Of a stretch of 64,000 nucleotides of DNA, positions 1,804 through 56,480 are shown piece by piece (position 1 is the stretch's first letter; each line of letters begins with the position of its first letter). The notes beneath the pieces were generated by a model, which saw only the letters and a program-made list of their open reading frames with translations, was not told the origin of the DNA and ran no database searches. A program made the position numbers and the translations under genes. The stretch covers positions 62,001-126,000 of IMG/VR virus record IMGVR_UViG_3300020165_000007. One strand, given 5' to 3'.

Positions 1804-1835
1804 ATTGATAAATATTAAGTTATTTGTTATATTTA
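1804..1835 (+). promoter_or_regulatory. Bacteroidota-type promoter variant (TTG-N20-TATATTTA) for helicase
   Basis: attg at 1804-1807, 20-nt spacer, TATATTTA at 1828-1835; implies the true helicase start is the in-frame TTG at 1854. Confidence 0.4.
1808..1815 (-). promoter_or_regulatory. Putative late promoter ATATTTAT
   Basis: Recurrent motif a few nt upstream of ATG 1802. Confidence 0.55.
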
Positions 1836-3608
1836 AGTGTATTTAGTCGACTTTTGGAAAATAAAACATTAAATAGCTTGCCTGAAGTGAGGGCTCTTCG
1901 TATTTTAGAGAAATACGAGGGGTATAATAATTACATTATCCGGTTACAGGATAAGATGAAAAAATTTAATCATTTTAAACTTACTCGTGCCCAAGCGGAT
2001 TACATAATTAAATTTAAAGATACTGTACCCAAAATAGCTAGAAGGTGGGTGGAACTTGATAGTTACTTTGGTCAAAAACTAATGAATGACAAGTTACTAC
2101 CAAAGAGACCTGAAAAAATTTATGTGGAAAAATTATTAGTGGAGAAAGAAAAGTCGTACCACATATGGGGTAAGTTATTTGAAAGTGAGGAACTTACAGA
2201 CATATGGTTACCTAAAGTTGCGTTAACAAAAAACAAACAAAGGGAAGTAAAAATCGACTATAGTAAGTACTCACATAGACCTCCGCTTTCACACCAAAAA
2301 GAATCTATAGAAAAACTTGTTGGTAATGACAAATATATATTGGCAGATGATATGGGTCTCGGAAAAACAACCTCAACAGTTATTGCGTCGATAGAGATGG
2401 GGATAGAAAAAGTATTAATTATATGCCCCGCATCTTTAAAAATTAACTGGGAGAGAGAAATACAAAATTATACGGAAAAATCTATTTCAATTATTGAGGG
2501 TAAAAAGTGGGAACCTTCCGAGTATACCATTATAAATTATGATATATTAAAAAACTTTCACGACCCAAAATACCCCGATAAATCAGAGATTTTAAATTAT
2601 GGTTTTGATTTGATTGTAATGGACGAAGCTCACTACGTTCAAAATAAAAAAGCTCAAAGAACAAAAATTGTAAATGACATCGCTAACAAAATAGGTAAGG
2701 TATGGTTACTAACGGGAACTCCGATGACCTCAAGGCCGATGAATTATTATAATCTTTTAGACTTAGTAGACTCTCCAGTCGCAGAAAATTGGATGGCCTA
2801 CGCTATAAGGTACTGTGCAGGTTATCAATTTAGTGTTGGTAGTAAAAGAGTTTGGAATGTTTCGGGAGCGTCTAATCTAGAAGAGTTAAGAGACAGGACA
2901 AAACCACAAGTATTAAGAAGACTAAAGGAAGACATCTTGGACTTACCTGAAAAAATAATAACTCCAGTTTATTTAAGAACCAAGTCTAAAGAATATAAAA
3001 AATTGATGGGTGAATACTATGATTGGTATAATTCATCTGAAGACTCGAATTCACTGACAATACAATTTTCTAAGTTAATGAAAGTCCGACAAGTTATTGC
3101 TGAAGAAAAAATAAAAGACACAATAGAAATTGCTCAGAACATAATAGACCAAGGTAAAAAAGTAATAATATTTACAAATTTTACAGATACACTAAATAAA
3201 ATAAACGAACATTTTGGTAAAGAGTCAGTTAAGTTAGATGGTAAAATGACCAAACCTAAAAGACAGGAATCTGTAGACGAGTTTCAAAACAATGATGACA
3301 TCAAAGTTTTTGTAGGTAATCTAAAAGCTGCGGGAGTAGGAATAACCCTAACAGCTGCAGAGGCGGTTATAATGAATGACCTATCTTTTGTTCCTGCTGA
3401 CCATTCACAAGCCGAAGATAGGGCGTATAGATATGGACAAAAGTTCTCAGTTTCAGTTTATTACCCGATATTAGAAAATACAATAGAAGGTATTATATAT
3501 AATATACTAACTAAAAAGAAAAATATTTTTGAAACAGTTATGGGTGATAATGAAGGTAAAGGTGACGTAATGGAAGAAATATTAAATATGATTTCACAAG
3601 AAAGGTGA
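1824..3608 (+). CDS. SNF2-family (SMARCAL1/HARP-like) DEAH helicase/translocase; probable start TTG 1854
   Basis: Motifs LADDMGLGKT (I), ICPASLKINWEREI (Ia), DEAH (II), LLTGTP (III), KVIIFTNF (IV), GVGITLTAA (V), QAEDRAYRYGQ (VI). Confidence 0.93.
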   Translation: MLYLSVFSRLLENKTLNSLPEVRALRILEKYEGYNNYIIRLQDKMKKFNHFKLTRAQADYIIKFKDTVPKIARRWVELDSYFGQKLMNDKLLPKRPEKIYVEKLLVEKEKSYHIWGKLFESEELTDIWLPKVALTKNKQREVKIDYSKYSHRPPLSHQKESIEKLVGNDKYILADDMGLGKTTSTVIASIEMGIEKVLIICPASLKINWEREIQNYTEKSISIIEGKKWEPSEYTIINYDILKNFHDPKYPDKSEILNYGFDLIVMDEAHYVQNKKAQRTKIVNDIANKIGKVWLLTGTPMTSRPMNYYNLLDLVDSPVAENWMAYAIRYCAGYQFSVGSKRVWNVSGASNLEELRDRTKPQVLRRLKEDILDLPEKIITPVYLRTKSKEYKKLMGEYYDWYNSSEDSNSLTIQFSKLMKVRQVIAEEKIKDTIEIAQNIIDQGKKVIIFTNFTDTLNKINEHFGKESVKLDGKMTKPKRQESVDEFQNNDDIKVFVGNLKAAGVGITLTAAEAVIMNDLSFVPADHSQAEDRAYRYGQKFSVSVYYPILENTIEGIIYNILTKKKNIFETVMGDNEGKGDVMEEILNMISQER

Positions 3609-3629
3609 GTTTGTTTTTATATTTCGCAT

Positions 3630-3637
3630 TATTTATA
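3630..3637 (+). promoter_or_regulatory. Putative late promoter TATTTATA
   Basis: Motif 10 nt upstream of SOD-fusion ATG 3648. Confidence 0.55.
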
Positions 3638-3647
3638 TATAAAAATA

Positions 3648-5207
3648 ATGGGTACTAAAAGGGCATTAAATAAAATAACTGATATAGAAAATCAGATTAT
3701 AAGTGAAGGGATAAAAAGAAAAGTATCACCGAACGTCCCAAAAGAAATTTTAAAAGAAATGAAAAAAATAGGTATCGAAAGATTACCTTACTCTTATTCA
3801 GCCTTAGAACGTTTTATAGATAAAGAAACTATGAACGTACACTACAATAAACATTATAAAGGTTATGTTAATAAACTTAATGATGCGATAAAAGATAAAA
3901 AGGGTAAGGACAAAAAATTAAAAGATATTGTGAAAACAATATCAATGTACGACAGAACTGTAAAAAATAATGCTGGCGGAGCGTTCAACCACGCATTGTT
4001 TTGGAAAATGTTAAGTCCTAAAAGGCAAAGATGTTCAGGAGAAATCTATGAGAAAATTATTAAAGAGTATAAAACGTTTAATAACTTTAAAAAGTTATTT
4101 GAGTCCGCAGCTCAAAAAAGATTTGGTTCAGGGTGGGTATGGCTTGTTTTAACAAAAAATAATAGGTTAAAAATAATGACTACTGCAAATCAAGACAACC
4201 CTCTTATGAATACCATTAAAGACGGTGGACTTCCATTATTAGGTTTGGATTTATGGGAACACTCTTATTATTTAAAATATAGAAATAAAAAAGACGATTA
4301 TATAAAAAACTTTTGGTCAGTAGTGAATTGGGATTTTGTGAACAACTTATATACATCTAACCCTAAATCCTCAATAAAGGAGTCGTTTAATAAAAAAAAT
4401 CTTATTGTTGAAATTGAGAGTCAGGGGTGTAATTCAAGACAAGTTAAACAGACCATAGAATTATTTAACACCAATCCTCAAATAAAGTGGAAATATCGTA
4501 CCGTAATTGATAAGGTTTTTAAAGAAATCTTTAAAGATTATTGGAGAGAAAAAGAAGGAGAGCAGTTATCGGGTATATATGACTTTGAATATAAAGGGAG
4601 TGTTGAAGGAGGTCGGTCGGTATTAAATAAAATCAATACAAACGCAACTACATTTTGTATTTTAAAAAATGACATTAATATTACTTTAAAACATTATGGA
4701 CACCCTCCGATTAGTTTTTACGGAAAAAATAAAAATGAACAAATAAAGGAATTATATCGATTTTTAAAATATATCATCCATTGGAAAGATAGTCTATTTA
4801 AAAATACATCAAACACTTTTGACTCTATGTATACCGCGGTTAATAGAAAAAATAAACAAGGTGATAAAACTGAAAATTTAGCGGTTAAAGAATTACAAAA
4901 AGTGTTCGGAGTTTCTAACGTAAAAAAAGTTGGTGAATTAGGTAGTGTTATAGATGCTATCGGTGGTGTTGATGCGATTATAAGGACAGATAATGGAGAT
5001 AAAACTGTACAAATAAAACCATTTAGAGATTATATTATTGAAGATGGGAAAATAACTATGGTCGGAACAGGTGTTATAAAACAGTATAAAACCGATATGT
5101 TAGTATTTCATAATAAAAATAAAGGAATAGTGGTATTTGATAATAACAACACCCAAATTAAAAACGGGAAATATGTTTTTGATAAAGAGTCTCAATATAA
5201 GTCTTGA
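3648..5207 (+). CDS. sodA: Mn/Fe superoxide dismutase (Mn-type signature) fused to a C-terminal PD-(D/E)xK-like (QxK) domain
   Basis: LPYSYSALE, HYNKHY, NNAGGAFNHALFW, FGSGWVWL, NQDNP, DLWEHSYY retain all four metal ligands; C-terminal part has GDKTE...GGVDAII...TVQIKP. Confidence 0.9.
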   Translation: MGTKRALNKITDIENQIISEGIKRKVSPNVPKEILKEMKKIGIERLPYSYSALERFIDKETMNVHYNKHYKGYVNKLNDAIKDKKGKDKKLKDIVKTISMYDRTVKNNAGGAFNHALFWKMLSPKRQRCSGEIYEKIIKEYKTFNNFKKLFESAAQKRFGSGWVWLVLTKNNRLKIMTTANQDNPLMNTIKDGGLPLLGLDLWEHSYYLKYRNKKDDYIKNFWSVVNWDFVNNLYTSNPKSSIKESFNKKNLIVEIESQGCNSRQVKQTIELFNTNPQIKWKYRTVIDKVFKEIFKDYWREKEGEQLSGIYDFEYKGSVEGGRSVLNKINTNATTFCILKNDINITLKHYGHPPISFYGKNKNEQIKELYRFLKYIIHWKDSLFKNTSNTFDSMYTAVNRKNKQGDKTENLAVKELQKVFGVSNVKKVGELGSVIDAIGGVDAIIRTDNGDKTVQIKPFRDYIIEDGKITMVGTGVIKQYKTDMLVFHNKNKGIVVFDNNNTQIKNGKYVFDKESQYKS

Positions 5208-5224: not shown

Positions 5225-5233
5225 ATATTTATA
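5225..5233 (+). promoter_or_regulatory. Putative late promoter ATATTTATA
   Basis: Motif 13 nt upstream of neck gene ATG 5247. Confidence 0.6.
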
Positions 5234-5246
5234 TATAAAATATATC

Positions 5247-6359
5247 ATGTCAGCAATTAACGAACCACAAAGAAGTAAGCTATATACTCGTATAAAACAT
5301 CTATTAGGTGCTCCCTTACGTGGTGTAGAAATTACCGATGAAATGATGGATTCACTAATGGAATTATCAATTCAAGACTACGCACAATATGTTAACGATT
5401 GGTTAATTGAGGCTCAATGGACATCATTGTACGGGCTAAATTTAGATGAACAGTCGGTAACTAGAGCTTTTATAACTCGTAGTTTAGATTGGGAAACACA
5501 GTATACATACGCTTACTCAAAAATTGTCGGTTTACAGGCTGGAGGTGACTCAGTATTAAAAAAAGATTTTATTACTTTAGTTCCTGGACAACAAATTTAT
5601 GAGGTACCTGCAGGAAGAGAAATTAATGAGTTATTATGGTTTAGTAGGGCAGAGTTAGATGCGGCATTTTTTGACCCATTTATGGGTGGTTTTGGTGGTT
5701 TTGGTGGTGTAGGTTTAGGTGGAGGAGCGGGATTCTCTCAAATGGGTTCTCAGGGAAATTATTTTATAACACCGGCCTTTGATATGTTACTTAGAATGCA
5801 AGATATTAACATTAAGAGAAGAATAATTTCAGGAGATTTAACTTATAGAATTACTGCACTACCTGAAGGTAAAAAGGCGGTTCATCTAATGAATGTACCT
5901 GGAGGTAAATTTGATTTTGGTAATATTCAATATAATCAATACGTTGTGTGGTATTGGTATTATGAAACTGATGACCGTGAGACCTGTTTAGCTGAAAATC
6001 CTGACATAGTAAGATTACCTTCAGATATCCCGATAGATGAAATGTTATGGGATGAGTTAAATAATCCAGCCCAAACATGGGTTAGGAGATGGTTTACTGC
6101 TTATGTAAAAGAATCTTTAGGGAGGGTAAGAGGTAAGTACCTAGGAAATCTAAAAACACCTGACTCCGAAATACAAATGGAGTATGACTCACTTTTAACA
6201 GAATCAAAAGACGAAAAATCAAAACTAATAGAAGAGTTAACTCAAAGGTTAGAAAGATTAAGGCCTGATAAAATGATGGAAAGACAAGCTAATGAAGCGG
6301 AAAATTTAAATAAATCATTACAATATCGGGCATTCCCAAGACAATTTTATTCAATATAA
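5247..6359 (+). CDS. Neck / head-tail adaptor protein (T4 gp13-like)
   Basis: N-terminal LYTRIKHLLGAPLRGVEITDEMMD matches the gp13-family pattern (R.LGAP...VE.T); C-terminal WVRRWFTAYVKESLGRVRGKY and helical tail. Confidence 0.75.
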   Translation: MSAINEPQRSKLYTRIKHLLGAPLRGVEITDEMMDSLMELSIQDYAQYVNDWLIEAQWTSLYGLNLDEQSVTRAFITRSLDWETQYTYAYSKIVGLQAGGDSVLKKDFITLVPGQQIYEVPAGREINELLWFSRAELDAAFFDPFMGGFGGFGGVGLGGGAGFSQMGSQGNYFITPAFDMLLRMQDINIKRRIISGDLTYRITALPEGKKAVHLMNVPGGKFDFGNIQYNQYVVWYWYYETDDRETCLAENPDIVRLPSDIPIDEMLWDELNNPAQTWVRRWFTAYVKESLGRVRGKYLGNLKTPDSEIQMEYDSLLTESKDEKSKLIEELTQRLERLRPDKMMERQANEAENLNKSLQYRAFPRQFYSI

Positions 6360-9872: not shown

Positions 9873-12800
9873 TTAACAAGACGGACATTCTATAATTTTG
9901 AACCCGTAAGCGGTACTGTTAAATAACCCTCCGTAAACTGTTAAAGTATAAATTGATTCTCCCTGAGGTTTTTCAAAAGAGAATACTCGTGAGCCATTTG
10001 AATATCCTCCACAACCCGCATAAGTATCTAGGGGGATTGAAGGGGTCAAGCCGCATGAGCCAGGAGATACATAAACATTACTATTAAGATTAAAATATTC
10101 TAAAGTACCTCCAATTTGACCTTTTGCACCATATCTAGAAACACCATTATCGTCCCATACATTATCATATAATGGATATGTGTAATTACCAGCATCCGAA
10201 TGGTAAGGGAAGTCGGTTACCGTAACAGGTACCGATTGGGTGCTGGTGAACTCTAACTGGTCAGTGTCGTTATTCCACGTAAATACATTACATATATACG
10301 GACTATTCTCAACTCTACTATCAACCAAAGACTCATTAGATGGTTGACCTAACAGTAAACTATCGATAACAACCTCATCTGAGTTATTTTTAACAACAAA
10401 CCGGTCATGAGCACTCTGTGCGTATAATGCGAATTTTACCGTACCCGCACAAGACGATAAATTAAGTGTCGCATTTATAACGGTCTTTGATGTAGAATAT
10501 GATTGTATAGTCCCATCGGGGTTTAAAACATTATTAAAGTTTGAAGTACTAATAGTAAAATTATCAGCACACTGTATAGCTTCAGGTATAGGTGATGACG
10601 TTACCGAAGGTGTTGGAGTAATGGTAGGTGTGATTGATGGTGTGATAGTAGGTGTGATGGTAGGTGTTGGTGTCGGTGTATTTGATGCACAACTTTCACA
10701 TCCTAAGGGGTAAGTTAAAACCTGTCCTACAACGGGACCTAACTGTGTTACGCCAGACCACGGGATTGCTAATTCACTAGGAACAAAGCTAAGATAACAA
10801 TCCCCATTTACTGATAACTCGTCTTGAAAGTCCACAAAATAATAAGTGGCCGATGCGCCGTATTGGGGTATGTAGCTAAAATCTGGTCCCGTTAAGTCGC
10901 CACTCGAATCCCATATAAAATATCCGTTTCCTGTTGTACATCCGGTAAAATAACCCGTCACTGTACACTCTATATCGAATGCATTAGCGGCATCGAAACA
11001 ATTATTTACTCCTCCCTGAAATATATCTTCGTCGTCTAAATAAAAATATGCAACATCTTCCGAAGGTGAAGTTCCGATTACCCTCCACGATAAGGGGTCT
11101 CCAGGGTTGGAATAATTCCAAACAAATACGTCACCATTATTAAGAGATGTGATGGTACCATTAAAAATAACACCCAAAACATACCCATCAGTATCATCAC
11201 TAACTGCTGAACAACACGGAATCACTTCGTAATAAACAATGGGTAGTGGTGGTGAAGAACTTGGAGTCACTGAAGGTGTTACGGTCATAGTTACCGATGG
11301 TGTCATAGTTACTGATGGTGTCATAGTTACTGATGGTGTCACAGTTACTGATGGTGTCACACTAGGTGTAACTGTTGGACATGGTTCACATAGTTGAGGG
11401 TTTAATATTAAGTCAGTACATATATTTTCTAAAAAGTTGTCTGAATTTATTGTAATACTACCGCTTCCACTACCTTGACCTTCAATGAATACAAAACAAT
11501 TTCCTGAATATGAGAATCCATGAAATCCTAAAATAGGTTGGTCTCCCACTACTGTAACAAACAAATCTTCAACTCCACTTGTACAACAAGACTCCGCTCG
11601 ATATAATGAAGTACATGGGTTTGACGCTAAACACGAAGAACAGTTATCAAATCCGGTACTATTGTCTATTGTAAAAGAAGGTGTTAAAGTATTGTCTAAT
11701 ACAAAGTTTATCACAGTATAACATTGTGGTAATATGTTTTGAGTCCCGTCACCACCAAAATAGAAAGTGTCATTTGATTGAGTTATTTGATTAGTAAACT
11801 GAACATGCTCCAAATATGTTTCATTATCGCAACACCCACTTAATAATACTTTATATACAAATTGTGTAGGTGTCGAACTTGGAGTGACTGTGGGGGTAAC
11901 CGTATTAGTTGGTGTTATAGATGGTGTTATAGTTGGTGTTATAGATGGTGTTGGTGTCATTGAAGGTGTAGGTGTTGGTGTAGGAATCTCATCTTCAATA
12001 CATTCTGTACATCCTGAGTATACAGTATCAATACTAAAATTAATGACAGGTTGGTCTATACTGTTAACATCTCCCACATACTCATAGCAATTTTCTTCTT
12101 GAGTGACGTAGTAAATACCATTTAGTGTTGGATTAAGACCTTGAGTATACACCGAAGGACATGTTATTTGTTCTTGAATATATGATTGTAATTCTCCATA
12201 TATTGACAACATTACAAGTAGGTCCAAAGTAGTAAGGACCCCGTCAACTCCACCAAACGTATCACAAAAATATTCAATATTAGTACATGGACTATTAAGA
12301 TAAAAAATGAAACACGCAAACATTGCGGCGTCAGTTATAACACCATTTTCATCCGCTAAAGGTGCCAAATGTGATGGTTCTTGAATTACTGTAGGTATAT
12401 TGTATGTCACACCATCTGCGTTTGTATACGGTACTGTGTCGTAAGGATATGAAACTACGGTACATTGTTCGGAACAACCTGTATATTTTTGTAAACAAGG
12501 ATGATTATTTGTACATGAAGTACAACTTACTGACCCATAATTTTCGGTAATAGTCCCTTGTGAAGGCCCTGTTTGTGCCGACGATGAAAGTATTTTGTAA
12601 CATCCAGAAGTAAAACTACTACTATAAGATGAGTTATTATTAATAAAATAAACGTAGTCATTAACGTTTGCAGATACGTTTAATGTGGTATTTGCAGTAT
12701 AGGTAATTCCATCACAACAACCTTCCAGTGTCAATAGGTTAGTTACGATAGTCCATGAGTCGGGAGTTGTACTTGGTGTGGGTGTAGGTGTTGGCGTTGG

Positions 12801-14204
12801 ACAATCAGGACATAACTGTTCACCACAAATGTTATTAAACACAAAACTGTTTTGACTAATTATAATTGAGGGATTATTTTGATTTTGTTCCATGTAGAGA
12901 AGTCTATAACAGTTACCGTTATAGAAAAATCCAGGGTTAAGGGATAATATAGGTGTAGAATTTAAAAGTAATTGTACCGTTATTTGGTCTCCGCTATTGC
13001 AACAATTTTCAGCTCTAAATAAACTGTTTGTTTGTTCACATGGGTCAAAGTTATTTTGATTATAATTAAAACATTGTAGACATGATAGATGAGTACTCGA
13101 TACTGAGTGTATTACATCACTTGCGTCTAAACCATTCACCCCAAATAAAGTATAACAACCAGGCTCAATCTGAGCGTTTCCATCATACATTATCCCATCA
13201 AAAAATACTATAGTTCCATTTTCAGGTAAATAGTCCATAGCAAAAGTCACTACAGTAACATCATATGGGGGACAACAAGATTTTGCATATGCGGCAAATT
13301 TATCCTCTGGTTGGTCTGAACATAAACTAGTACATATCGAGCTTTGACAGCTTTGAGCTGATGGTCCGTTAAAAATTAATTGTGTTTGTTGACCTGTTAC
13401 CTGTCCATTACTAACCCAACAAGTACCATTATGAGTGACCGCATTACCATTAAATACCCAACCCCCCGTTTGAGTTTCCGTTAATAAAACTCTGGCTAAT
13501 ATAGTATCCTTAGGATTACAACAATTAATCCATTCATGTGTAGTGTATTGGGGAGGTGGAAAAGTATTATTTAAATATTGTGAATCAGAATTTACGTTAA
13601 TTATCGCATTAGCGTCTGAACATACAATGTTTTCAAACTCATAATAACCTTGTTGTAAATCGGAAAAAGGTATACTAAAGGTTAATTCAGTTGAACCTAA
13701 CGACTCTCTGACGGTGATAGATACTGAACCACTTTGAGTGACAGTCGTCCCCACATCATCTTTTAATTTTAAATCAAAAGAGATTGTAGTGTTGACATTA
13801 ACTAATATATTAGAAATTATATTAACGTAAGTGGTGGTTGTTCCTCCACCCGGTCCCGCTTCAAAAACATTATTTACGGTTAAACGAGGTATGACACCGG
13901 ATATAGGGGTTAACGTAGGAGTTGGTGTCGGTGTAAATGACAGTGTCGGTGTCGGAGTAACTAAATTAACACTACCAGTACAAGAACAACTTGTTACGGT
14001 ATCTATTAATTCATATGTGATACATGTCGAACCTGAAGTGCCCGAAAAATTGGTTGTTTCGAAATAATAAGGAAAATTATCAGGATTTATCAATCCTGTG
14101 GCGATTAATTGTTGGGGACTACCCGGTGCACAATCAGAAATATAAAGCGAATAATCACCTGGTTGAGGGTCTGATGGTGTTAAGTTTACTGAGATATAGG
14201 CCAT
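9873..14204 (-). CDS. 1443-aa Cys-rich repeat, Thr/Pro-linker appendage/tail-fibre-like protein
   Basis: About 9 modules CC...G.CY...CxxC...C separated by (TP)n/TPS linkers; N-terminal and Ig-like domains shared with the neighbouring gene; late motif upstream. Confidence 0.7.
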   Translation of the reverse strand: MAYISVNLTPSDPQPGDYSLYISDCAPGSPQQLIATGLINPDNFPYYFETTNFSGTSGSTCITYELIDTVTSCSCTGSVNLVTPTPTLSFTPTPTPTLTPISGVIPRLTVNNVFEAGPGGGTTTTYVNIISNILVNVNTTISFDLKLKDDVGTTVTQSGSVSITVRESLGSTELTFSIPFSDLQQGYYEFENIVCSDANAIINVNSDSQYLNNTFPPPQYTTHEWINCCNPKDTILARVLLTETQTGGWVFNGNAVTHNGTCWVSNGQVTGQQTQLIFNGPSAQSCQSSICTSLCSDQPEDKFAAYAKSCCPPYDVTVVTFAMDYLPENGTIVFFDGIMYDGNAQIEPGCYTLFGVNGLDASDVIHSVSSTHLSCLQCFNYNQNNFDPCEQTNSLFRAENCCNSGDQITVQLLLNSTPILSLNPGFFYNGNCYRLLYMEQNQNNPSIIISQNSFVFNNICGEQLCPDCPTPTPTPTPSTTPDSWTIVTNLLTLEGCCDGITYTANTTLNVSANVNDYVYFINNNSSYSSSFTSGCYKILSSSAQTGPSQGTITENYGSVSCTSCTNNHPCLQKYTGCSEQCTVVSYPYDTVPYTNADGVTYNIPTVIQEPSHLAPLADENGVITDAAMFACFIFYLNSPCTNIEYFCDTFGGVDGVLTTLDLLVMLSIYGELQSYIQEQITCPSVYTQGLNPTLNGIYYVTQEENCYEYVGDVNSIDQPVINFSIDTVYSGCTECIEDEIPTPTPTPSMTPTPSITPTITPSITPTNTVTPTVTPSSTPTQFVYKVLLSGCCDNETYLEHVQFTNQITQSNDTFYFGGDGTQNILPQCYTVINFVLDNTLTPSFTIDNSTGFDNCSSCLASNPCTSLYRAESCCTSGVEDLFVTVVGDQPILGFHGFSYSGNCFVFIEGQGSGSGSITINSDNFLENICTDLILNPQLCEPCPTVTPSVTPSVTVTPSVTMTPSVTMTPSVTMTVTPSVTPSSSPPLPIVYYEVIPCCSAVSDDTDGYVLGVIFNGTITSLNNGDVFVWNYSNPGDPLSWRVIGTSPSEDVAYFYLDDEDIFQGGVNNCFDAANAFDIECTVTGYFTGCTTGNGYFIWDSSGDLTGPDFSYIPQYGASATYYFVDFQDELSVNGDCYLSFVPSELAIPWSGVTQLGPVVGQVLTYPLGCESCASNTPTPTPTITPTITPSITPTITPTPSVTSSPIPEAIQCADNFTISTSNFNNVLNPDGTIQSYSTSKTVINATLNLSSCAGTVKFALYAQSAHDRFVVKNNSDEVVIDSLLLGQPSNESLVDSRVENSPYICNVFTWNNDTDQLEFTSTQSVPVTVTDFPYHSDAGNYTYPLYDNVWDDNGVSRYGAKGQIGGTLEYFNLNSNVYVSPGSCGLTPSIPLDTYAGCGGYSNGSRVFSFEKPQGESIYTLTVYGGLFNSTAYGFKIIECPSC

Positions 14205-14216
14205 TTTACTTTTTTT

Positions 14217-14225
14217 TATAAATAC
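14217..14225 (-). promoter_or_regulatory. Putative late promoter GTATTTATA
   Basis: Motif 12 nt upstream of ATG 14204. Confidence 0.6.
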
Positions 14226-14234
14226 TATTTATGT

Positions 14235-15737
14235 TTAATTTGTGTTAACATCGCAATTTAATGGAGTTATCGGTGTTTGAGTTGGTGTAACCGATGGGTT
14301 AGGTGTTACGGCTACATCACAACTTAATGGAGTTATTGGTGTTTGAGTTGGTGTAACTGATGGGTTAGGCGTTACGGCTACATCACAACTTAATGGAGTT
14401 ATTGGTGTTTGAGTTGGTGTAACTGATGGGTTAGGTGTTACGGCTACATCACAATCTAAATCGACACACTCAGGGTTAGATGTTGATGGAGTTATTGAGG
14501 GGGTTGTAGTTATTGAGGGAGTCGTTGTTGGTGTTGGTGTCGGACACGCGCAATCACTAGCTTTACATGAATTAAATCTAGGTCCCCATAGGTCACCTAT
14601 GTATGGACTTCCAGACCCTGTACTAAACGGAATATAACAATTACCGTTATAATATATTGCATTACCATTAGTAACCCATCCATTAACTCCGAGGGCTGAT
14701 GCATCAATTTGACCTACCACGTATTGGGGTGAGGTATCTTTACAACAGGCAATAAAACGGTGAGTTTGCCATATAGGGCTATTTTTACCGGTAAAGGTAA
14801 CTGAATTTACTGTGTACGAATCAACCAACTCTCCCGTGGATGAGAAATCTTTAAATTCACTATATGTACCTAATACATCGGTATACGATAAAGAGTTTTC
14901 AGTTATGGTTGCGGTTCCTGAAGTTTGACCTTGATTAATAGTTACTGACACACTAATTTCTACAAAGGTACTATTAGTCCTTTCAAGTCTATTGATAAAG
15001 CTTACTGTAGTATTAGTAGATGCCGCCACATTTGATGTTGCGGTGTAATTACATACTGTTGAACCACTTTCGTAAACAACACCAAAACCAATATTAAAAG
15101 GTATTACTGAAGATGAGGGCGTTACCGATGGAGTCGCGGTTACCGATGGAGTCGCGGTTATCGATGGAGTCGCGGTTACCGATGGAGTTACTGTTATCGA
15201 TGGAGTTGCTGTTATCGATGGAGTTGCTGTTATCGATGGAGTTGCGGTTATCGATGGTGTAGATGTGGGTGAAAGTCCTGGAGTTGCGGTTATCGATGGA
15301 GTTGCTGTTATCGATGGAGTTGCTGTTATCGATGGAGTCGCGGTTATCGATGGAGTTGCTGTTATCGATGGAGTCGCGGTTATCGATGGAGTTGCTGTTA
15401 CCGATGGAGTTGCTGTTATCGATGGTGTAGATGTGGGTGAAAGTCCTGGAGTTGCGGTTATCGATGGTGTTACAGTTACAGTGGGTGTTGGGCTTGGTAA
15501 TAACGTTTGACCACTACAGATTAAACCTGATATAGATTCCGAAACTTTAAAATCATAACAACTTATACTCCCGAACGTTTCGTCTAAATTAACTAAATAA
15601 GGGAAAGAGTCGTAAGTCAACCCTGTAGATATGGTTGTATAAGTGGGAGAAGAGCAATCTTTTAATTCAACTGTAAACGTATTAGTTACTCCAGTTAAAT
15701 TAGTACTTGTTAATAATATTCTAGCGAATGTTGCCAT
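14235..15737 (-). CDS. 500-aa mucin-like (TPSITA repeat) appendage protein with Ig-like and Cys modules
   Basis: N-domain, (TPSITA)n tract, Ig-like domain, CC module and three C-terminal 22-aa repeats. Confidence 0.7.
   Translation of the reverse strand: MATFARILLTSTNLTGVTNTFTVELKDCSSPTYTTISTGLTYDSFPYLVNLDETFGSISCYDFKVSESISGLICSGQTLLPSPTPTVTVTPSITATPGLSPTSTPSITATPSVTATPSITATPSITATPSITATPSITATPSITATPSITATPGLSPTSTPSITATPSITATPSITATPSITVTPSVTATPSITATPSVTATPSVTPSSSVIPFNIGFGVVYESGSTVCNYTATSNVAASTNTTVSFINRLERTNSTFVEISVSVTINQGQTSGTATITENSLSYTDVLGTYSEFKDFSSTGELVDSYTVNSVTFTGKNSPIWQTHRFIACCKDTSPQYVVGQIDASALGVNGWVTNGNAIYYNGNCYIPFSTGSGSPYIGDLWGPRFNSCKASDCACPTPTPTTTPSITTTPSITPSTSNPECVDLDCDVAVTPNPSVTPTQTPITPLSCDVAVTPNPSVTPTQTPITPLSCDVAVTPNPSVTPTQTPITPLNCDVNTN
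14250..14455 (-). repeat. 3 x 66-nt tandem repeat encoding CDVAVTPNPSVTPTQTPITPL(S/N)
   Basis: Near-identical nucleotide units visible at 14260-14455. Confidence 0.85.
15110..15495 (-). repeat. 18-nt tandem repeat array encoding TPS(I/V)TA
   Basis: Repeated gatggagttgc(t/g)gttatc units on the + strand. Confidence 0.9.
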
Positions 15738-15750
15738 TTTACGGTTATCT

Positions 15751-15763
15751 TATAAATAAATAC
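15751..15763 (-). promoter_or_regulatory. Putative late promoter (overlapping double TATTTAT)
   Basis: GTATTTATTTATA upstream of ATG 15737. Confidence 0.55.
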
Positions 15764-17039: not shown

Positions 17040-17048
17040 TATAAATAT
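17040..17048 (-). promoter_or_regulatory. Putative late promoter ATATTTATA
   Basis: Motif 12 nt upstream of protease ATG 17027. Confidence 0.6.
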
Positions 17049-22545: not shown

Positions 22546-22572
22546 ATAAATACTTCCTTCGATGTATTTATA
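22546..22572. promoter_or_regulatory. Back-to-back divergent late promoters (GTATTTAT x2)
   Basis: ATAAATAC (22546-22553) and GTATTTATA (22564-22572) form an inverted pair between divergent genes. Confidence 0.65.
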
Positions 22573-50194: not shown

Positions 50195-51991
50195 TTATCT
50201 TAATTCTTTTAAGTCAAATGTTCTAACACCATCAACTGTAATCTTACCGTAGAAACGGTTGTTCACCATCTTCTTAGCGTATCTAGTCATGATACCCTTA
50301 ATTGGTGTAAAGTTGAATGGGTTATACATTGTAGGTGTTAACTGAAGCGGTACATACGGTGCATATACATATCCAGTATCAAGTAATGATGAACCTTTGT
50401 GTCCCAACAATACTGTGTTTGGTGGGAAGTAAGGGTCACGGTAAACTTGATATCTACCTGACAATGTTCCAACTCTTTCAATACCCATGTTATACTGGTC
50501 CTGGTCAGGAGCCGCGTTTGAAACGTGGAAGTACTCAAGGTCGTCAAAAATAGCAGAAATTTCAGAAGAAACAACAACCCAATTTGCACCACCTCTTAAA
50601 GTTGACTTATGGATTTGAGCTGAAATCTGATTGATTGCTGTAATCAATGTTTGATTCCAATCCTTTTGGTTATAGTTTACAGAACCGTTAGAAATTCTTC
50701 TCCAACCGTTGTAATCCCATCTTAAGCTCCACGCCGCACCTTTTCTTAAGTCTCTTAAGATTTCACGGTCAATCTCAGCTGCAACTTGCTCTGACAACAG
50801 TGCTGTCAATTCAGCTTCAGCATCAATATTATGGAATGCAGATACGTCTTGTGCGAGTTCTGGTGACCATTGTGCTCTTAACTTTCTTTCTGTAACAGAA
50901 ACAGTAACAGCGTCAAGGTCGAATGAAACCTCACCAATCTTATCTTCAAACTCAAGACTTTCATAAACTCTGTGATAAGACTCAAAAGTATCTCCTGATG
51001 CGATAGTAGTTCCGGTATAACCATCGATTGAACAGTTTGGACATCCTACAACAGGTGTTGAGAAGTCTAACTCTAAATAGATTTTACCTGTGACATCACA
51101 GATATCTTCGTATCTTCCACCAGGACCAGGATGAGAACCTGAATAGAAAGTAGTTTTTTGCTCACTACCATACTGTACAATACCTTTACCGTACTTTTGA
51201 GTAACTACTCTAAAGTTATAATACACATCGGGTGCAGCACTTTCATAAGTTTCTAATGAAGCTAAGAAATCTTCAGTATCCATTTCATTTCCATCGGGTC
51301 CGATTAATTTACCAGCTCCTGATGAACTAAATCCTGATAACATAAAGATTAATGACCTAACGTTACCATCTGCCGCTGGGTTACCAGGGCTACCTGCCGC
51401 AGCACCTAAAGCTAATCCCAAAGTAGTACCAACTAATTCACCGTTAGACCATACTGCAGGTACTAAGGTATTAGTTTGAGCACTCCACTGACCTTTTGAA
51501 TAATCAAATAATCCTGCGGGGTCAGAGTTTGGTGTACTTCCTTCATAAAATCTGTCATAAAGGTTAGTTCCTGAATCGTATCCAGCCGATGGGTCTGACT
51601 CGTTATTACCAGGTGCTCCGAATGGTTGTCTGTGTGAACCAGCTCCTTGAGCACCTTCTTGGATTTTTGGTACAAAGTAAAATAACTTACCGATAGGTAA
51701 ATTCATCGCTTGAACAGAAACGATATCGTTAGCCAATAACTTAGAGAATACTCTTCTGATGATTGGAAAAACAACAGTTTCAAATGAACCTGAACTGTCT
51801 GAAGATGATGCTTCGTTTATCAAATGTGACGCTTGGTTTTCATACAATTGCGCCATGTTTTCTTTAATGTGTCCTTTAAGACCGTCGAGGAACCCTAATT
51901 TGTCCCACTTATTGATTGTGTCCTCCTTGATAACTTTTAAGTGCTTAAGACCAATGTTACCAACTAGACCTGATTCTAATAATGCTCCCAT
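50195..51991 (-). CDS. Major capsid protein (T4 gp23-like)
   Basis: IIRRVFSKLLANDIVSVQAMNLPIGKLFY, RKLRAQWSPELAQD..AFHNIDAEAELTALLSEQVAAEIDREI, YAPYVPL, PIKGIMTRY. Confidence 0.96.
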   Translation of the reverse strand: MGALLESGLVGNIGLKHLKVIKEDTINKWDKLGFLDGLKGHIKENMAQLYENQASHLINEASSSDSSGSFETVVFPIIRRVFSKLLANDIVSVQAMNLPIGKLFYFVPKIQEGAQGAGSHRQPFGAPGNNESDPSAGYDSGTNLYDRFYEGSTPNSDPAGLFDYSKGQWSAQTNTLVPAVWSNGELVGTTLGLALGAAAGSPGNPAADGNVRSLIFMLSGFSSSGAGKLIGPDGNEMDTEDFLASLETYESAAPDVYYNFRVVTQKYGKGIVQYGSEQKTTFYSGSHPGPGGRYEDICDVTGKIYLELDFSTPVVGCPNCSIDGYTGTTIASGDTFESYHRVYESLEFEDKIGEVSFDLDAVTVSVTERKLRAQWSPELAQDVSAFHNIDAEAELTALLSEQVAAEIDREILRDLRKGAAWSLRWDYNGWRRISNGSVNYNQKDWNQTLITAINQISAQIHKSTLRGGANWVVVSSEISAIFDDLEYFHVSNAAPDQDQYNMGIERVGTLSGRYQVYRDPYFPPNTVLLGHKGSSLLDTGYVYAPYVPLQLTPTMYNPFNFTPIKGIMTRYAKKMVNNRFYGKITVDGVRTFDLKELR

Positions 51992-53942: not shown

Positions 53943-54665
53943 TTAATAACCTAAATAATCGGATAACTTTTTCATTAAGTCAACACTTTTACCTAAACTA
54001 CCATCTATATTCTGTTCAGTAGCTCTATTCTGTGTCTCCTCTTCAATATTTTCTTCATACTTACCTTTATCGTCTTTATTTAAAAATAAATAAGCTCCGG
54101 GTGTTGAAGGTGACGAGACCAAATCAAAACATATTAATTCAAAATCCTCTTGAACTTCATTTCTTTCTCCTTTCTTTACTAGTGAACCTACTCCACGAGA
54201 AGATACTCCCATAGTAACCCCTTGTCTCATTAAGTTGGCCGCTTGGTCTCCGGGACAAGATACGACACCTCTTTCATGAAATCCTGGTGAGGTTAGTAAT
54301 TTAATCTTACCCATAAGAGTGTTACCTTCCCACCACACATCTGTTATAAGATGAGAAACACGGTCTAAATCAATTAAAGACGATTCAGGGTGATTAAGTT
54401 CAGATATTGATAATCCCTTTTCAATTGCCTTTTTATAATTATCGGCTTCACGTCTTAATATTTTTTCAGGATATACTCTACCATTTCTATTTGGTGTATC
54501 AAATTTCTGTAAAGTCGCATAAAACTCAAAGGGTTTAGAGTGTTCTAGTTGTCCGTAAGATTCTTTAATTACTTTAGAGTTCCTACCATCCTTAGGGTTT
54601 ATTGACCCAGCATCCCACTCAACTAAAATACCTTTACCTGTATCGTTTGGTCCTAATATTTTCAT
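53943..54665 (-). CDS. Prohead maturation protease (T4 gp21-like)
   Basis: NRNGRVYP, SELNHP, GVSSRGVGS, FDLVSSPSTPGA. Confidence 0.93.
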   Translation of the reverse strand: MKILGPNDTGKGILVEWDAGSINPKDGRNSKVIKESYGQLEHSKPFEFYATLQKFDTPNRNGRVYPEKILRREADNYKKAIEKGLSISELNHPESSLIDLDRVSHLITDVWWEGNTLMGKIKLLTSPGFHERGVVSCPGDQAANLMRQGVTMGVSSRGVGSLVKKGERNEVQEDFELICFDLVSSPSTPGAYLFLNKDDKGKYEENIEEETQNRATEQNIDGSLGKSVDLMKKLSDYLGY

Positions 54666-55513: not shown

Positions 55514-55743
55514 TATTCTTCGACCCCTCTACTCCTTGAAAATTTTTCAAGTGTGGTGAATCCTAGTCCGGCTCCAACAATATACATCATACCATCCCAA
55601 ACATATTTTTGTAGAGGTATTTCCATAAAGATGTTGGATATAAATGCAACACACATCATGAAAAATGCTATTATAGTAACAAATCTTTTTGATGATTTTT
55701 GACCATCGACGTCACCTAATAATGATGTGAAAAATTTTCTCAT
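55513..55743 (-). CDS. Holin-like two-TM membrane protein
   Basis: SSKR followed by two hydrophobic helices (FVTIIAFFMMCVAFISNIF; GMMYIVGAGLGFTT) and a charged C-terminus. Confidence 0.55.
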   Translation of the reverse strand: MRKFFTSLLGDVDGQKSSKRFVTIIAFFMMCVAFISNIFMEIPLQKYVWDGMMYIVGAGLGFTTLEKFSRSRGVEE

Positions 55744-56480
55744 GAAATAAGTCCACTTTCTAATTGTCTTAATTTATATAAAGACGTTAAACTATTTTCC
55801 GACTCATTAATTTTATTAATAGTCTTTTGTAATTTTTCTTTTAATTCGGTATCGGTAGATTCGTTTAGATTATTGTTTAACTTTTCTATTACTGAGTCTT
55901 TTGTGTTGGATATTTCCTCTTTTAATGATTTACCGTCTAAAGAAATAAAATACTTTAACTCATTCTTATCCGACTCATTTAATGTGACATACTCATCATT
56001 AAATGTTTTAGTTGCAACTTTTAACATAGTTGATAGAGGTAGATTAACTGATGTACTTTCTTTAACTACTATTGTTTTTAATAAATTGTTTTTAATCTTT
56101 AATTTAGACTCTAAAAGAGACTCTAAGTTCTTCACAACGTTTTTAGTGTAGATTTGATAATCAATATCGGCATATCTATTATCCACATTTTCTTTTAGTA
56201 ACCCGTCAATCCATTCACCTAAAGAGTTAATTTTAGTTTGATTATTATTAATTAAATCTCTTAATTGTTCAAATGATTCTGATATGTAATCATCAACTAT
56301 ACTTTCATTTAATCCCTTTTGTGACGATAACTCATCGTATATATAATAAGCCTCAGAAATAGATTTATCACCTATAACGTAATGTTTAAATTCTTTTAAA
56401 CCTTTTTTAAAAATATCTTTTTTGTAATTTTTTTCAAAAAAAGTTTCGATTTTAGTTTTTATTACTCCAAATGAATTCAT
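55740..56480 (-). CDS. Helical hypothetical protein rich in [ILV]xES motifs, candidate prohead core component
   Basis: GLNES, LLES, VVKES, TLNES, NLNES, INES, QLES in 246 aa; late motif upstream. Confidence 0.7.
   Translation of the reverse strand: MNSFGVIKTKIETFFEKNYKKDIFKKGLKEFKHYVIGDKSISEAYYIYDELSSQKGLNESIVDDYISESFEQLRDLINNNQTKINSLGEWIDGLLKENVDNRYADIDYQIYTKNVVKNLESLLESKLKIKNNLLKTIVVKESTSVNLPLSTMLKVATKTFNDEYVTLNESDKNELKYFISLDGKSLKEEISNTKDSVIEKLNNNLNESTDTELKEKLQKTINKINESENSLTSLYKLRQLESGLIS

What the first reader, a model, noticed from the sequence alone, without database searches (positions are those of the whole stretch)
3648..5207. Mn-SOD fused to a PD-(D/Q)xK nuclease-like domain, with putative protease sites between them
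Seen: an intact SOD (ligands H, H, D, H; GGA+NQD signature typical of Mn/cambialistic enzymes) at about 3760-4305, a linker SSIKESF...LIVE, then ~280 aa ending in GDKTE-helix...GGVDAII...TVQIKP, the layout of a PD-(D/E)xK core with the QxK variant. It has a late-type motif and sits among neck genes. Inference: a virion-packaged polyprotein yielding an antioxidant enzyme (protecting DNA in sunlit water, or countering host ROS-based abortive responses) plus a nuclease or DNA-binding effector. I know of no described SOD-nuclease fusion.
Basis: partly seen in the sequence, partly recalled or inferred. Interest (0 to 1): 0.72.

Follow-up and report, generated by a model that had tools for sequence, protein, structure and literature searches.

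The report
Phage SOD–nuclease modular late protein
A marine T4-type jumbo phage makes one late protein that joins an intact manganese-type superoxide dismutase to a restriction-enzyme-like (Mrr-type) nuclease through a flexible linker carrying conserved head-protease-type cut sites, an architecture that is widespread in uncultured phages but that I found described nowhere.

Summary
ORF 3648-5207 (+) encodes 519 aa in five parts:
- a 37-aa leader;
- a complete Fe/Mn SOD with all four metal ligands and Mn-type residues invariant in 59 homologues;
- a disordered linker;
- a helical subdomain;
- a C-terminal restriction-endonuclease fold with invariant E409, D442 and Q455-I-K457, the active 'PD-QxK / Mrr-like' variant.

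It is not a chimera. Contigs from independent DNA and RNA libraries cross the junction, more than 1,400 database proteins share the architecture, and both halves are under purifying selection.

New findings:
- The phage is T4-type (gp23, gp21 prohead protease, gp13 neck protein next door), marine or estuarine, and probably infects Bacteroidota.
- The nuclease part ('X') is a lineage-core gene that always sits between an SNF2 helicase and gp13.
- The SOD is a cassette inserted in frame behind X's own leader. It has been lost again in some relatives and split into a separate overlapping gene in others.
- The linker carries two conserved Phi-x-E/small motifs (E245 59/59, E255 58/59). The same rare (L/I)-N-E-(S/A) motif marks the capsid-protein maturation site and occurs four times in a core-position protein next to the protease.

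Processing by the protease and head packaging are therefore plausible but unproven. The nuclease's substrate is unknown.

The parts
3630..3637 (+). Sense-oriented TATTTATA upstream motif (late-type candidate promoter), followed by an A-rich leader and no Shine-Dalgarno sequence
   Evidence: the motif lies within 40 nt upstream of 37 of 248 ORFs, peaking 20-23 nt from the ATG. These include the gp13-like gene, the gp21 protease gene and large structural-looking genes.
3648..5207 (+). 519-aa ORF: leader, Mn-type SOD, linker, helical subdomain, PD-QxK nuclease core
   Evidence: dN/dS is 0.04-0.10 for all parts.
3648..3758 (+). Leader, residues 1-37: an amphipathic helix (K-I-x-x-I/L-E-x-x-I), a variable stretch, then Phi35-x-E37 directly before M38
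   Evidence: Column counts are (E37 50/59, M38 52/59). pLDDT is below 50 for residues 18-39. A leader HMM ranks the stand-alone homologues P0002, P0008, P0005 and P0010 at 1, 2, 3 and 5 of 535 N-termini.
3759..4358 (+). Fe/Mn superoxide dismutase domain, residues 38-237. Ligands H65, H115, D201, H205; H69, Y73, Q182, E204, Y208 also invariant. M38-KKIGIE-LPY looks like the ancestral SOD start.
4359..4433 (+). Flexible linker, residues 238-262, with two conserved Phi-x-E/small motifs: I243-K-E245-S246 (nt 4374-4385) and I253-V-E255-I256 (nt 4404-4415). It ends at invariant C261.
   Evidence: E245 is present in 59/59 and E255 in 58/59 sequences. pLDDT is below 50 at residues 239-252. The split variant's X gene starts at the second site.
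4434..4847 (+). Helical subdomain, residues 263-400, with the conserved G322-R323-S-x-L-N-x-L-N-T-N motif and C337. No assigned fold family.
   Evidence: There are only weak restriction-enzyme leads.
4848..5204 (+). Restriction-endonuclease-fold core, residues 401-519. E409 (helix), D436, D442 (start of a strand) and Q455-x-K457 (next strand) are invariant.
   Evidence: The QxK variant is documented as active in NhoI/Eco15I (PMC11347163).
1824..3608 (+). SNF2-family helicase, the conserved upstream neighbour
   Evidence: The synteny holds in L002-L012, L016, L018 and L021-23.
5247..6359 (+). T4 gp13-type neck protein, the conserved downstream neighbour, with the same TATTTATA motif
   Evidence: It is 68% identical to an L021 protein that carries a precomputed Pfam Phage_T4_gp13 hit. 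It also hits phrog_211 adaptor. The motif is shown.
53943..54665 (-). T4 gp21-type prohead protease (Peptidase_S77), the candidate enzyme for the linker sites
55740..56480 (-). 246-aa protein between the portal and protease genes (the T4 gp67/gp68 position), carrying GLNES, TLNES, NLNES and KINES
50195..51991 (-). gp23-type major capsid protein with L-I-N-E/A at residues 57-61, the expected maturation position

Best explanation
The gene encodes a late-expressed, modular protein of a marine T4-type jumbo phage that probably infects Bacteroidota. Its C-terminal 260 aa ('X': a helical subdomain plus an Mrr-like PD-QxK endonuclease core) is a lineage-core gene, always found between an SNF2 helicase gene and the gp13 neck gene. 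An Mn-type SOD gene was inserted in frame just behind X's short N-terminal leader. This produced the layout leader, SOD, linker, X.

The two enzymes are structurally independent, with a disordered linker and no fixed interface, and they are functionally separable: relatives exist without the SOD, and others have SOD and X as separate overlapping genes. These points are shown.

The most likely mode of action is inferred. The precursor is made late and enters the prohead. The phage's gp21-type protease then cuts it after E245 and/or E255 (and probably after E37), releasing a ~208-aa SOD and a ~265-aa nuclease. Both would stay in the head and enter the next cell with the DNA. There the SOD would remove superoxide at the onset of infection. 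The Mrr-like nuclease would attack DNA that differs from the phage's own, such as host or competitor DNA. The nuclease's substrate and the packaging step are not shown.
For: Architecture:
- SOD Pfam domains and all ligands are present.
- The C-domain model has pLDDT 91.8.
- Fold matches: Hjc Z 8.2 over about 100 of 125 residues, then SPARDA DREN, NhoI/Eco15I, I-Ssp6803I, DpnI and PvuII; PD(D/E)XK, DUF4365, PDDEXK_5 and Hjc clusters.
- E409, D442, Q455 and K457 are invariant and sit on the helix, strand start and strand as in the canonical core.
- QIK is the active motif of Eco15I.

Reality of the fusion:
- 8 IMG/VR contigs carry it.
- More than 1,400 proteins share the architecture.
- DNA and RNA-library contigs cross the junction.
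- dN/dS is 0.04-0.10.

Modularity:
- Full-length pTM is 0.51, with pLDDT below 50 at residues 18-39 and 239-252.
- Stand-alone X occupies the same slot in L002, L012, L016 and L018.
- Stand-alone genes are nested inside fusion clades.
- The split form occurs in L021-23.
- The leader is shared with stand-alone forms.

Processing and packaging (circumstantial):
- The genome has a gp21 protease, gp23 and a T4 head-gene order.
- The upstream motif is shared with the protease, gp13 and structural genes.
- E245 and E255 are invariant within Phi-x-E/small motifs in a disordered segment.
- The rare (L/I)NE(S/A) motif (20 sites per 80.8k aa) is at the capsid maturation site and occurs 4 times in the core-position protein.
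- T4 precedent: 10-19-aa N-terminal targeting propeptides are removed by gp21 after Glu (PMC9026906).
Against: - There are no proteomic or biochemical data, so packaging and cleavage are inferred from motifs only.
- The window's own site 1 is I-K-E-S, not the strict (L/I)NE(S/A). Only 17 of 59 fusions have the strict form.
- No other ORF of this genome shares the leader (next best E 0.29), unlike the shared targeting sequence of T4 internal proteins.
- In the split variant the leader stays with the SOD and X starts without it.
- Phi-x-E motifs are frequent by chance in K/E/I/L-rich sequence.
- A nuclease stored next to packaged DNA needs a self/non-self rule that has not been demonstrated.
- Sequence profiles (Pfam, PHROGs, NCBIfam, PADLOC, PDB) do not recognise the C-domain, and the fold E-values are marginal (3e-3 PDB, 2.6e-4 AFDB).
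- Dimer prediction gave no answer.
Confidence: 0.5

Rival explanations
1. Cytoplasmic late enzyme, not packaged. X is the phage's DNA-debranching or Holliday-junction-resolving nuclease, needed to clear branches before and during packaging (the functional analogue of T4 endonuclease VII). The SOD merely rides on its late expression to protect the late-infected cell. The conserved linker glutamates serve another purpose.
For: The best structural matches are Hjc resolvases (Z 8.2). No Endonuclease_7 homologue is found in the 88%-complete genome. The gene has the late-type motif and sits beside the neck gene and near packaging genes. X is a conserved lineage-core gene. The split variant's X has no leader.
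Against: X is twice the size of Hjc, with an extra 140-aa helical subdomain. There is no Pfam Hjc match. The QxK core is typical of Mrr-like restriction-type enzymes rather than resolvases. X evolves faster than its neighbours (64% identity against about 90% for polB and gp13). This reading does not explain the invariant E245 and E255 in a disordered linker or the conserved leader. EndoVII is not universal in T4-type phages (my own knowledge), so its absence is weak evidence.
Confidence: 0.27
2. Cytoplasmic anti-host or anti-competitor nuclease. X is an Mrr-like, possibly modification-dependent, endonuclease that degrades host or co-infecting DNA while the phage's own DNA is spared. The SOD is an independent auxiliary gene that happened to be captured in the same ORF.
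For: The PD-QxK core is shared with the modification-dependent enzymes NhoI/Eco15I and DpnI and with the SPARDA effector nuclease. X evolves relatively fast. The family is virus-restricted.
Against: Host-shutoff nucleases are usually early genes (my own knowledge), whereas this gene carries the late-type motif. No evidence was obtained here that the phage DNA is modified. Linker conservation is again left unexplained.
Confidence: 0.15
3. The SOD domain is mainly a structural dimerisation scaffold for the nuclease rather than an antioxidant enzyme.
For: Fe/Mn SODs are obligate dimers, and many PD-(D/E)xK nucleases act as dimers (established knowledge). Dimer-interface residues E204 and Y208 are invariant.
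Against: All catalytic and second-sphere SOD residues are invariant and dN/dS is 0.05, which points to selection on catalysis. SOD-less and split variants of X exist. The linker is disordered, with no fixed domain arrangement.
Confidence: 0.04
4. Assembly chimera or missed stop or frameshift: SOD and X are really two genes in this phage.
For: A related lineage does have two overlapping genes.
Against: The identical open frame is found in 8 IMG/VR contigs, in at least 14 DNA runs from at least 11 studies, and in RNA-library contigs spanning the junction with no indels. More than 1,400 full-length homologues exist.
Confidence: 0.01

Closest known systems
Bacterial Mn-superoxide dismutases (e.g. 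PDB 1jr9; E. coli SodA family)
   Same: Both Pfam domains; about 50% identity in the HMMER alignment to 1jr9; four metal ligands; gateway His/Tyr; Mn-type Gln in the C-terminal domain; dimer-interface Glu/Tyr.
   Different: It is embedded in a 519-aa phage protein, preceded by a 37-aa leader and followed by a linker and a nuclease-like module. It scores below the NCBIfam equivalog cut-offs (189 against 363 bits).
PD-QxK (Mrr-like) subgroup of PD-(D/E)xK nucleases: BisI-family NhoI/Eco15I, DpnI, SPARDA DREN domain
   Same: Core fold; a Glu on the first helix; an Asp at the start of strand 2; Q-x-K on strand 3 (QIK as in Eco15I).
   Different: No detectable sequence-profile relationship. It has an additional invariant D436 and a family-specific 140-aa helical subdomain. 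It is phage-encoded and lineage-core rather than part of a defence system. Its substrate is unknown.
Archaeal Holliday junction resolvase Hjc
   Same: Best structural match (Z 8.2, about 100 of 125 residues aligned). The D-x12-(E/Q)-x-K spacing is, as I recall it, the same as in P. furiosus Hjc; I could not confirm this in the held papers.
   Different: Q instead of E in the third motif; twice the size; no Pfam Hjc hit; dimerisation not supported or refuted.
T4 internal proteins and Alt (capsid-targeting propeptide plus gp21 processing)
   Same: A T4-type phage with a gp21-family protease; a short N-terminal leader; conserved Phi-x-E/small motifs in disordered segments; a late-type upstream motif (PMC9026906).
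   Different: No sequence similarity to the T4 targeting sequence. The leader is not shared by other ORFs of this genome. The cargo would be two enzymes released from one precursor. Packaging is not demonstrated.
Stand-alone phage SODs (e.g. Pseudomonas phage PA5oct group, Vibrio phage 2.275.O, Bacillus phage MZTP02) and virion-associated Cu/Zn SODs of giant eukaryotic viruses
   Same: A virus-encoded SOD. Virion packaging of SOD in chloroviruses and megaviruses is from my own knowledge, not checked here.
   Different: Those are separate genes (and the Cu/Zn type in giant viruses). Here an Fe/Mn-type SOD is part of a larger precursor with a nuclease.

Membership tests
Fe/Mn superoxide dismutase | Sod_Fe_N and Sod_Fe_C domains above Pfam gathering scores | tested here: met
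   85.4 and 128.9 bits against cut-offs of 27 and 20.9.
Fe/Mn superoxide dismutase | Four metal ligands (His, His, Asp, His) plus gateway His/Tyr | tested here: met
   H65, H115, D201, H205, H69 and Y73 are invariant in 59 fusions and aligned to 1jr9.
Fe/Mn superoxide dismutase | Mn-type discriminating residues (Gly-Gly before the second His, Phe after it, Gln-Asp in the C-terminal domain; the rule is from my own knowledge) | tested here: met
   G110-G111, F118 and Q182-D183 are conserved. The best NCBIfam model is SOD [Mn], although below its equivalog cut-off. The actual metal cannot be read from sequence.
Fe/Mn superoxide dismutase | Superoxide dismutation activity and a dimeric state | not testable with these tools
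   This needs an activity gel or metal analysis. Interface residues E204 and Y208 are invariant.
PD-(D/E)xK nuclease superfamily, PD-QxK (Mrr-like) subgroup | Restriction-endonuclease-like alpha-beta-beta-beta core fold | tested here: met
   The model has pLDDT 91.8. The top ~35 VIA-align rows are all this fold, Z up to 8.2. Foldseek probability is 0.99-1.0 but E-values are only 3e-3 to 2.6e-4. Atlas returns PDDEXK_5 and Hjc.
PD-(D/E)xK nuclease superfamily, PD-QxK (Mrr-like) subgroup | Glu on the core helix, Asp at the N-terminus of strand 2, (D/E/Q)-x-K on strand 3 | tested here: met
   E409 lies in helix 389-420, D442 lies just before strand 443-447, and Q455 and K457 lie in strand 450-458. 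All are invariant. The layout follows PMC11347163. A residue-level superposition was not available.
PD-(D/E)xK nuclease superfamily, PD-QxK (Mrr-like) subgroup | Match to a curated sequence family (Mrr_cat, PDDEXK_n, Hjc and the like) | tested here: not met
   No Pfam, PHROG, NCBIfam or PADLOC hit for the C-domain. Among 48 members only single non-significant hits appear (Mrr_cat_2 at 0.0045, RE_EcoO109I at 0.0045). The profile against PDB sequences found nothing relevant.
PD-(D/E)xK nuclease superfamily, PD-QxK (Mrr-like) subgroup | Metal-dependent phosphodiester cleavage | not testable with these tools
   This needs a nuclease assay with D442A, Q455A and K457A mutants.
Hjc-type Holliday junction resolvase | Hjc sequence family, a ~125-140 aa single domain, and a homodimer | tested here: not met
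   No PF01870 hit. X has an extra 140-aa helical subdomain. Dimer prediction gave no answer.
T4-type capsid-targeted, gp21-processed head proteins | A gp21-family prohead protease encoded by the same phage | tested here: met
   Peptidase_S77 at 81 bits; phrog_207 head maturation protease at 2e-43.
T4-type capsid-targeted, gp21-processed head proteins | Cleavage motifs (hydrophobic-x-Glu) in accessible segments, matching this phage's own substrates | tested here: inconclusive
   E245 59/59, E255 58/59 and E37 50/59 lie in segments with pLDDT below 50 or low confidence. (L/I)NE(S/A) is also at the capsid maturation site and occurs 4 times in the core-position protein. No cleavage data exist.
T4-type capsid-targeted, gp21-processed head proteins | An N-terminal targeting leader shared among several internal proteins of the phage | tested here: not met
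   The leader HMM finds no other ORF in the genome (next best E 0.29). A 17-column HMM has low power.
T4-type capsid-targeted, gp21-processed head proteins | Presence of the processed protein in virions | not testable with these tools
   This needs virion or viral-fraction proteomics.

The most novel reading that the evidence does not exclude
A widespread lineage of marine T4-type phages uses the prohead targeting and protease system to load a two-enzyme precursor into the head. The cargo is an Mn-SOD and an Mrr-like endonuclease, released by cleavage at conserved linker glutamates and delivered with the DNA. This would be a natural counterpart of the engineered T4 packaging fusions that use the capsid-targeting sequence, and the first phage-particle-borne SOD.
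Probability: 0.4. Interest if true: 0.8.

Novelty: new variant of a known kind. Interest (0 to 1): 0.62.

Why it matters
Both enzymes belong to well-known superfamilies. What is new is their combination in one phage protein, the new sequence family of the nuclease module, and the evolutionary behaviour of the SOD as an in-frame cassette that is gained, lost and split. I found none of this described.

The family is abundant in ocean and estuary metagenomes and is transcribed in the field. It is annotated only as 'superoxide dismutase', so half of each protein is currently invisible to annotation.

If the linker sites are real protease sites, this would be a natural example of T4-type heads carrying enzymatic cargo, an antioxidant plus a nuclease, into the next host. 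That bears on how phages cope with oxidative stress and host DNA or defences at the first moments of infection. It can be tested directly with a protease co-expression assay and viral-fraction proteomics.

Tried and rejected
- Sequence-library searches for the C-domain (Pfam, PHROGs, NCBIfam, PADLOC, and a PDB profile search) returned nothing usable.
- megablast of the first 12 kb against cultured phages found no match. tblastn found the C-domain only in two records of a 735-kb uncultured phage.
- The search for related loci with the whole-family alignment failed because no stretch was conserved enough. It was redone with the single protein.
- Several 'stand-alone' hits turned out to be contig-truncated fusions. 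For P0016 and P0012 the frame is open to the contig edge and reads the SOD C-terminus. I therefore counted as stand-alone only genes with an upstream stop and the SNF2 gene in view.
- The T4 late promoter TATAAATA in the T4 orientation is not enriched overall (23 matches against 16.8 expected). The real signal is its reverse complement in the sense orientation, close to start codons.
- The shared-leader (common targeting sequence) test within the genome was negative.
- C-domain homodimer prediction gave no answer.
- Protein-language-model look-alikes for the helical subdomain scored 0.64 or below, so they are leads only.
- The literature search for Hjc catalytic residue numbers found nothing, so that spacing comparison rests on memory.
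- The chimera or missed-stop reading was rejected.
- The SOD-as-scaffold reading was largely rejected.
Full report

Yes. ORF 3648..5207 (+) encodes 519 aa.
- Pfam finds Sod_Fe_N (residues 44-123) and Sod_Fe_C (130-233), both well above threshold.
- The best solved relative is the MnSOD 1jr9 (E 3e-58, residues 41-235).
- NCBIfam ranks the SOD [Mn] model first, but below its equivalog cut-off.

**2. Is it an artefact?**

No.
- The same open frame, with the same neighbours, is present in eight IMG/VR contigs at 64-100% C-domain identity.
- Near-identical sequence occurs in at least 14 marine, seawater or estuary DNA runs from at least 11 studies, and in metatranscriptome libraries.
- Contigs from two DNA runs and two RNA libraries run through the SOD/C-domain junction (nt 4365) without indels or joints.
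- A database search returned 1,443 proteins. The 120 listed are mostly 506-526 aa, cover 92-100% of the query, and carry both SOD Pfam domains. Where they are named at all, the name is 'Fe-Mn family superoxide dismutase'.
- Against a relative with dS of about 0.4-0.9, dN/dS is 0.05 (leader plus SOD), 0.04 (helical part) and 0.09-0.10 (nuclease core). The comparison values are 0.017 for SNF2, 0.03 for polB and 0 for gp13.
- Both halves are therefore functional. The C-domain is somewhat less constrained, and at larger distance it is the fastest-diverging gene of the block: 64% identity against 87-91% for its neighbours.

**3. What is the SOD part?**

In 59 aligned fusions the following are invariant:
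- the four metal ligands H65, H115, D201 and H205;
- H69, Y73, W163, Q182, W203, E204 and Y208.

G110-G111, F118 and Q182-D183 are the Mn-type discriminators as I know them (own knowledge). The actual metal cannot be decided from sequence. It is the only SOD in the 270-kb record.

**4. What is the C-terminal part?**

No curated sequence library recognises it.

An exhaustive search found 142 cluster representatives. Their alignment has these invariant columns (full-protein numbering): G405, D436, D442, Q455, K457 and Y480. E409 is nearly invariant, and invariant among the fusions.

AlphaFold with that alignment gives pLDDT 91.8 and pTM 0.84.
- Residues 263-400 form a helical subdomain with a conserved GRSxLNxLNTN motif.
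- Residues 403-519 form a helix followed by a mostly beta core.

Fold-search results:
- Foldseek's best PDB matches are Hjc resolvases, I-Ssp6803I, SPARDA nuclease domains and NhoI. Probability is 0.99-1.0 but E-values are only about 3e-3.
- AlphaFold-DB clusters are 'PD(D/E)XK endonuclease domain', DUF4365 and restriction endonucleases (best E 2.6e-4).
- VIA-align gives Z 8.2 to A. fulgidus Hjc over about 100 of 125 residues. The next ~35 rows are all restriction-endonuclease-fold enzymes.
- The ESM Atlas returns PDDEXK_5 and Hjc clusters.

The conserved residues sit where the canonical core requires them. E409 is on the long helix, D442 immediately precedes a strand, and Q455-x-K457 lies in the next strand.

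The Q-for-D/E substitution is a documented active variant. [quoted passage not shown] I conclude that X has an intact Mrr-like PD-QxK nuclease core and belongs to a new sequence family within that superfamily. The equality of the D-x12-(E/Q)-x-K spacing with P. furiosus Hjc is from memory and could not be confirmed.

**5. Which phage, and where in it?**

The window is part of a 270,383-bp virus record, estimated 88% complete. It is T4-type:
- a Gp23 capsid protein;
- a Peptidase_S77 gp21 protease;
- portal and large terminase, in the T4 order terminase, portal, 246 aa, 147 aa, protease, 531 aa, capsid.

The closest cultured capsid proteins are from Flavobacterium T4-like phages (39% identity). 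Start codons are preceded by A-rich, Shine-Dalgarno-less leaders, and a distant family member lies next to a PorP/SprF gene. A Bacteroidota host is therefore likely, but this is inference.

The gene's neighbours are:
- upstream, an SNF2 helicase;
- downstream, a 370-aa protein that is 68% identical to one carrying a precomputed Phage_T4_gp13 Pfam hit;
- then a 110-aa ORF, and the B-family DNA polymerase on the other strand.

**6. Expression signal**

The T4 late box TATAAATA is not enriched as such. Its reverse complement, read in the sense direction (TATTTATA followed by A-rich sequence), lies within 40 nt of the start of 37 of 248 ORFs, peaking 20-23 nt upstream. These ORFs include this gene, gp13, the gp21 protease, the 246-aa head-module protein and several very large structural-looking genes. 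Its timing is not measured.

**7. Evolution of the architecture (new)**

Genuine stand-alone X genes of 284-290 aa, with the SNF2 stop just upstream and gp13 downstream, occupy the same slot in four other contigs. Two apparent stand-alone hits are fusions cut by contig ends.

The first ~17 residues of the fusions form an amphipathic leader. An HMM built from it ranks the stand-alone proteins P0002, P0008, P0005 and P0010 at 1st, 2nd, 3rd and 5th among 535 N-termini. After the leader comes Phi35-x-E37 and then M38-KKIGIE-LPY. M38 is present in 52/59 sequences, and this stretch looks like the original SOD start.

The SOD was therefore inserted in frame behind X's own leader rather than added at the N-terminus.

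On a C-domain tree the verified stand-alone genes are nested at several places within fusion clades. P0002 sits inside two clades with at least 96% SH-aLRT support, while a distant clade has no known fusion. The cassette has therefore been lost, or exchanged, more than once.

In a basal lineage seen in three independent assemblies the arrangement is split:
- a 248-aa leader-plus-SOD gene;
- an overlapping (29 nt, +1 frame) 266-aa X gene that starts M-I-V-E-N, exactly at the fusions' second linker motif.

Covalent linkage is therefore not essential, and the linker is a natural boundary.

**8. Linker and protease sites**

The full-length model has pTM 0.51. pLDDT is below 50 at residues 1-3, 18-39 and 239-252, which means two independent domains on a flexible tether.

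Within that tether:
- E245 is invariant (59/59) and E255 nearly so (58/59);
- each is preceded by L/I/V two positions earlier and usually followed by S/G/T/A (42/59 and 46/59).

T4 gp21 cuts after Glu in such motifs and removes the 10-19-residue capsid-targeting propeptides of internal proteins (PMC9026906).

In this genome the strict form (L/I)-N-E-(S/A/G) is rare, at 20 sites in 80.8k residues. Yet it occurs at residues 58-61 of the capsid protein, the expected maturation position, and four times in the 246-aa protein encoded between portal and protease (the T4 gp67/gp68 position). The family consensus of linker site 1 is (L/I)-N-E-S. The window's own version is I-K-E-S.

This is specific circumstantial support for cleavage by the head protease, and hence for residence in the prohead. 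Arguments against:
- there are no proteomic data;
- only 17/59 fusions have the strict motif;
- no other ORF shares the leader;
- the split variant's X lacks the leader.

**9. Most likely mechanism and rivals**

Shown:
- a modular late-motif gene encoding an intact SOD and an intact PD-QxK nuclease-fold domain that are structurally and evolutionarily separable.

Inferred:
- processing at E245/E255 (and E37) by the gp21-type protease in the prohead (about 0.5);
- delivery of both enzymes with the DNA;
- the SOD acting at the onset of infection;
- the nuclease discriminating foreign from phage DNA.

The main rival (about 0.27) is a cytoplasmic debranching or junction-resolving nuclease for packaging. 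Its support is the Hjc-like fold, the absence of an EndoVII homologue and the late-type motif. The other rivals are a cytoplasmic anti-host nuclease (about 0.15), an SOD used as a scaffold (about 0.04) and an artefact (about 0.01).

**10. Comparison with what is known, and novelty**

Phage SODs exist as separate genes. PD-QxK nucleases are well known. T4 heads carry protease-processed cargo.

Two literature searches aimed at phage SODs, and two aimed at SOD-nuclease combinations, found no description of this fusion. The library is limited to open-access papers and preprints. Database entries with the architecture exist, for example a 501-aa 'superoxide dismutase [uncultured Caudovirales phage]' in BFVD and virus-only Atlas clusters, but the C-domain is unannotated in them.

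I rate it a new variant of known kinds, with moderate-to-high interest because it is abundant, is present in environmental RNA libraries, and is directly testable.

Noticed in passing
Whole genome; in the window e.g. 3630-3637, 5226-5233, 14217-14224, 15751-15758, 17040-17047, 22565-22572, 46488-46495, 54677-54684, 56493-56500: The candidate late promoter of this T4-type phage reads TATTTATA in the sense direction, the reverse complement of T4's TATAAATA. It lies only 10-23 nt from start codons and is followed by A-rich, Shine-Dalgarno-less leaders. It precedes 37 of 248 ORFs.
   Followed up: partly
L012:3-3983 and L016:333-3197 (relatives of window 1824-3608): The orthologous SNF2 helicase genes in two relatives are interrupted. 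In L012 the window helicase matches in three separated pieces within a 1326-aa ORF. In L016 there are two ORFs, one with a Pfam Intein_splicing hit. The window's own copy is uninterrupted.
   Followed up: no
L021:7837-9523 (also L022, L023): In the lineage with the split SOD/X genes, an IS605-type TnpB/OrfB gene (Cas12f-like TNB domain) and a small HNH protein are inserted between X and the gp13 neck gene.
   Followed up: no
L006 versus window 1824-5207: Mosaicism: in L006 the SNF2 gene is 99.6% nucleotide-identical to the window, while the adjacent SOD-X gene and downstream genes are only 87-93% identical. This implies a recent recombination breakpoint at the SNF2/SOD-X boundary.
   Followed up: partly
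window 9873-14204 (-), 14235-15737 (-), 17055-20606 (-): Three large neighbouring proteins (1443, 500 and 1183 aa) share a domain (phrog_15511). The largest is full of Pro/Thr-rich linkers and Cys-rich repeats. They are probably fibre or adhesin proteins, and two of them carry the TATTTATA motif.
   Followed up: no
window 22587-48018 (+): A long run of about 25 co-directional genes of roughly 130-650 aa includes at least one glycosyltransferase (25163-26374, phrog_7162). It may be a sugar or modification cluster, which would be relevant if the phage DNA or virion is glycosylated.
   Followed up: no
window 50195-51991 (-): The gp23-type capsid protein is 598 aa and matches the Gp23 model in two separated pieces (model positions 3-91 and 123-359). 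This suggests an insertion relative to T4 gp23.
   Followed up: no
BFVD entry A0A8D9CCA0: An 1113-aa 'uncultured marine phage' protein contains the X fold (TM 0.78 by query). 1113 equals 594 + 519, the summed lengths of the window's SNF2 and SOD-X proteins, so it may be a read-through or merged gene call of the two neighbours. Not checked.
   Followed up: no
window 4428-4430 and 4656-4658 (C261 and C337 of the protein): Two cysteines are invariant in all 59 fusions, one at the end of the linker and one in the helical subdomain. They are not invariant across the wider family. They could form a disulfide or metal site or be redox-sensitive, which is notable next to an SOD.
   Followed up: no
L020:151-2919: A distant stand-alone family member (P0061) lies between a PhoH gene and a PorP/SprF (Bacteroidota type IX secretion) gene on a 3-kb contig. 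This hints at a Bacteroidota association for the wider family.
   Followed up: no
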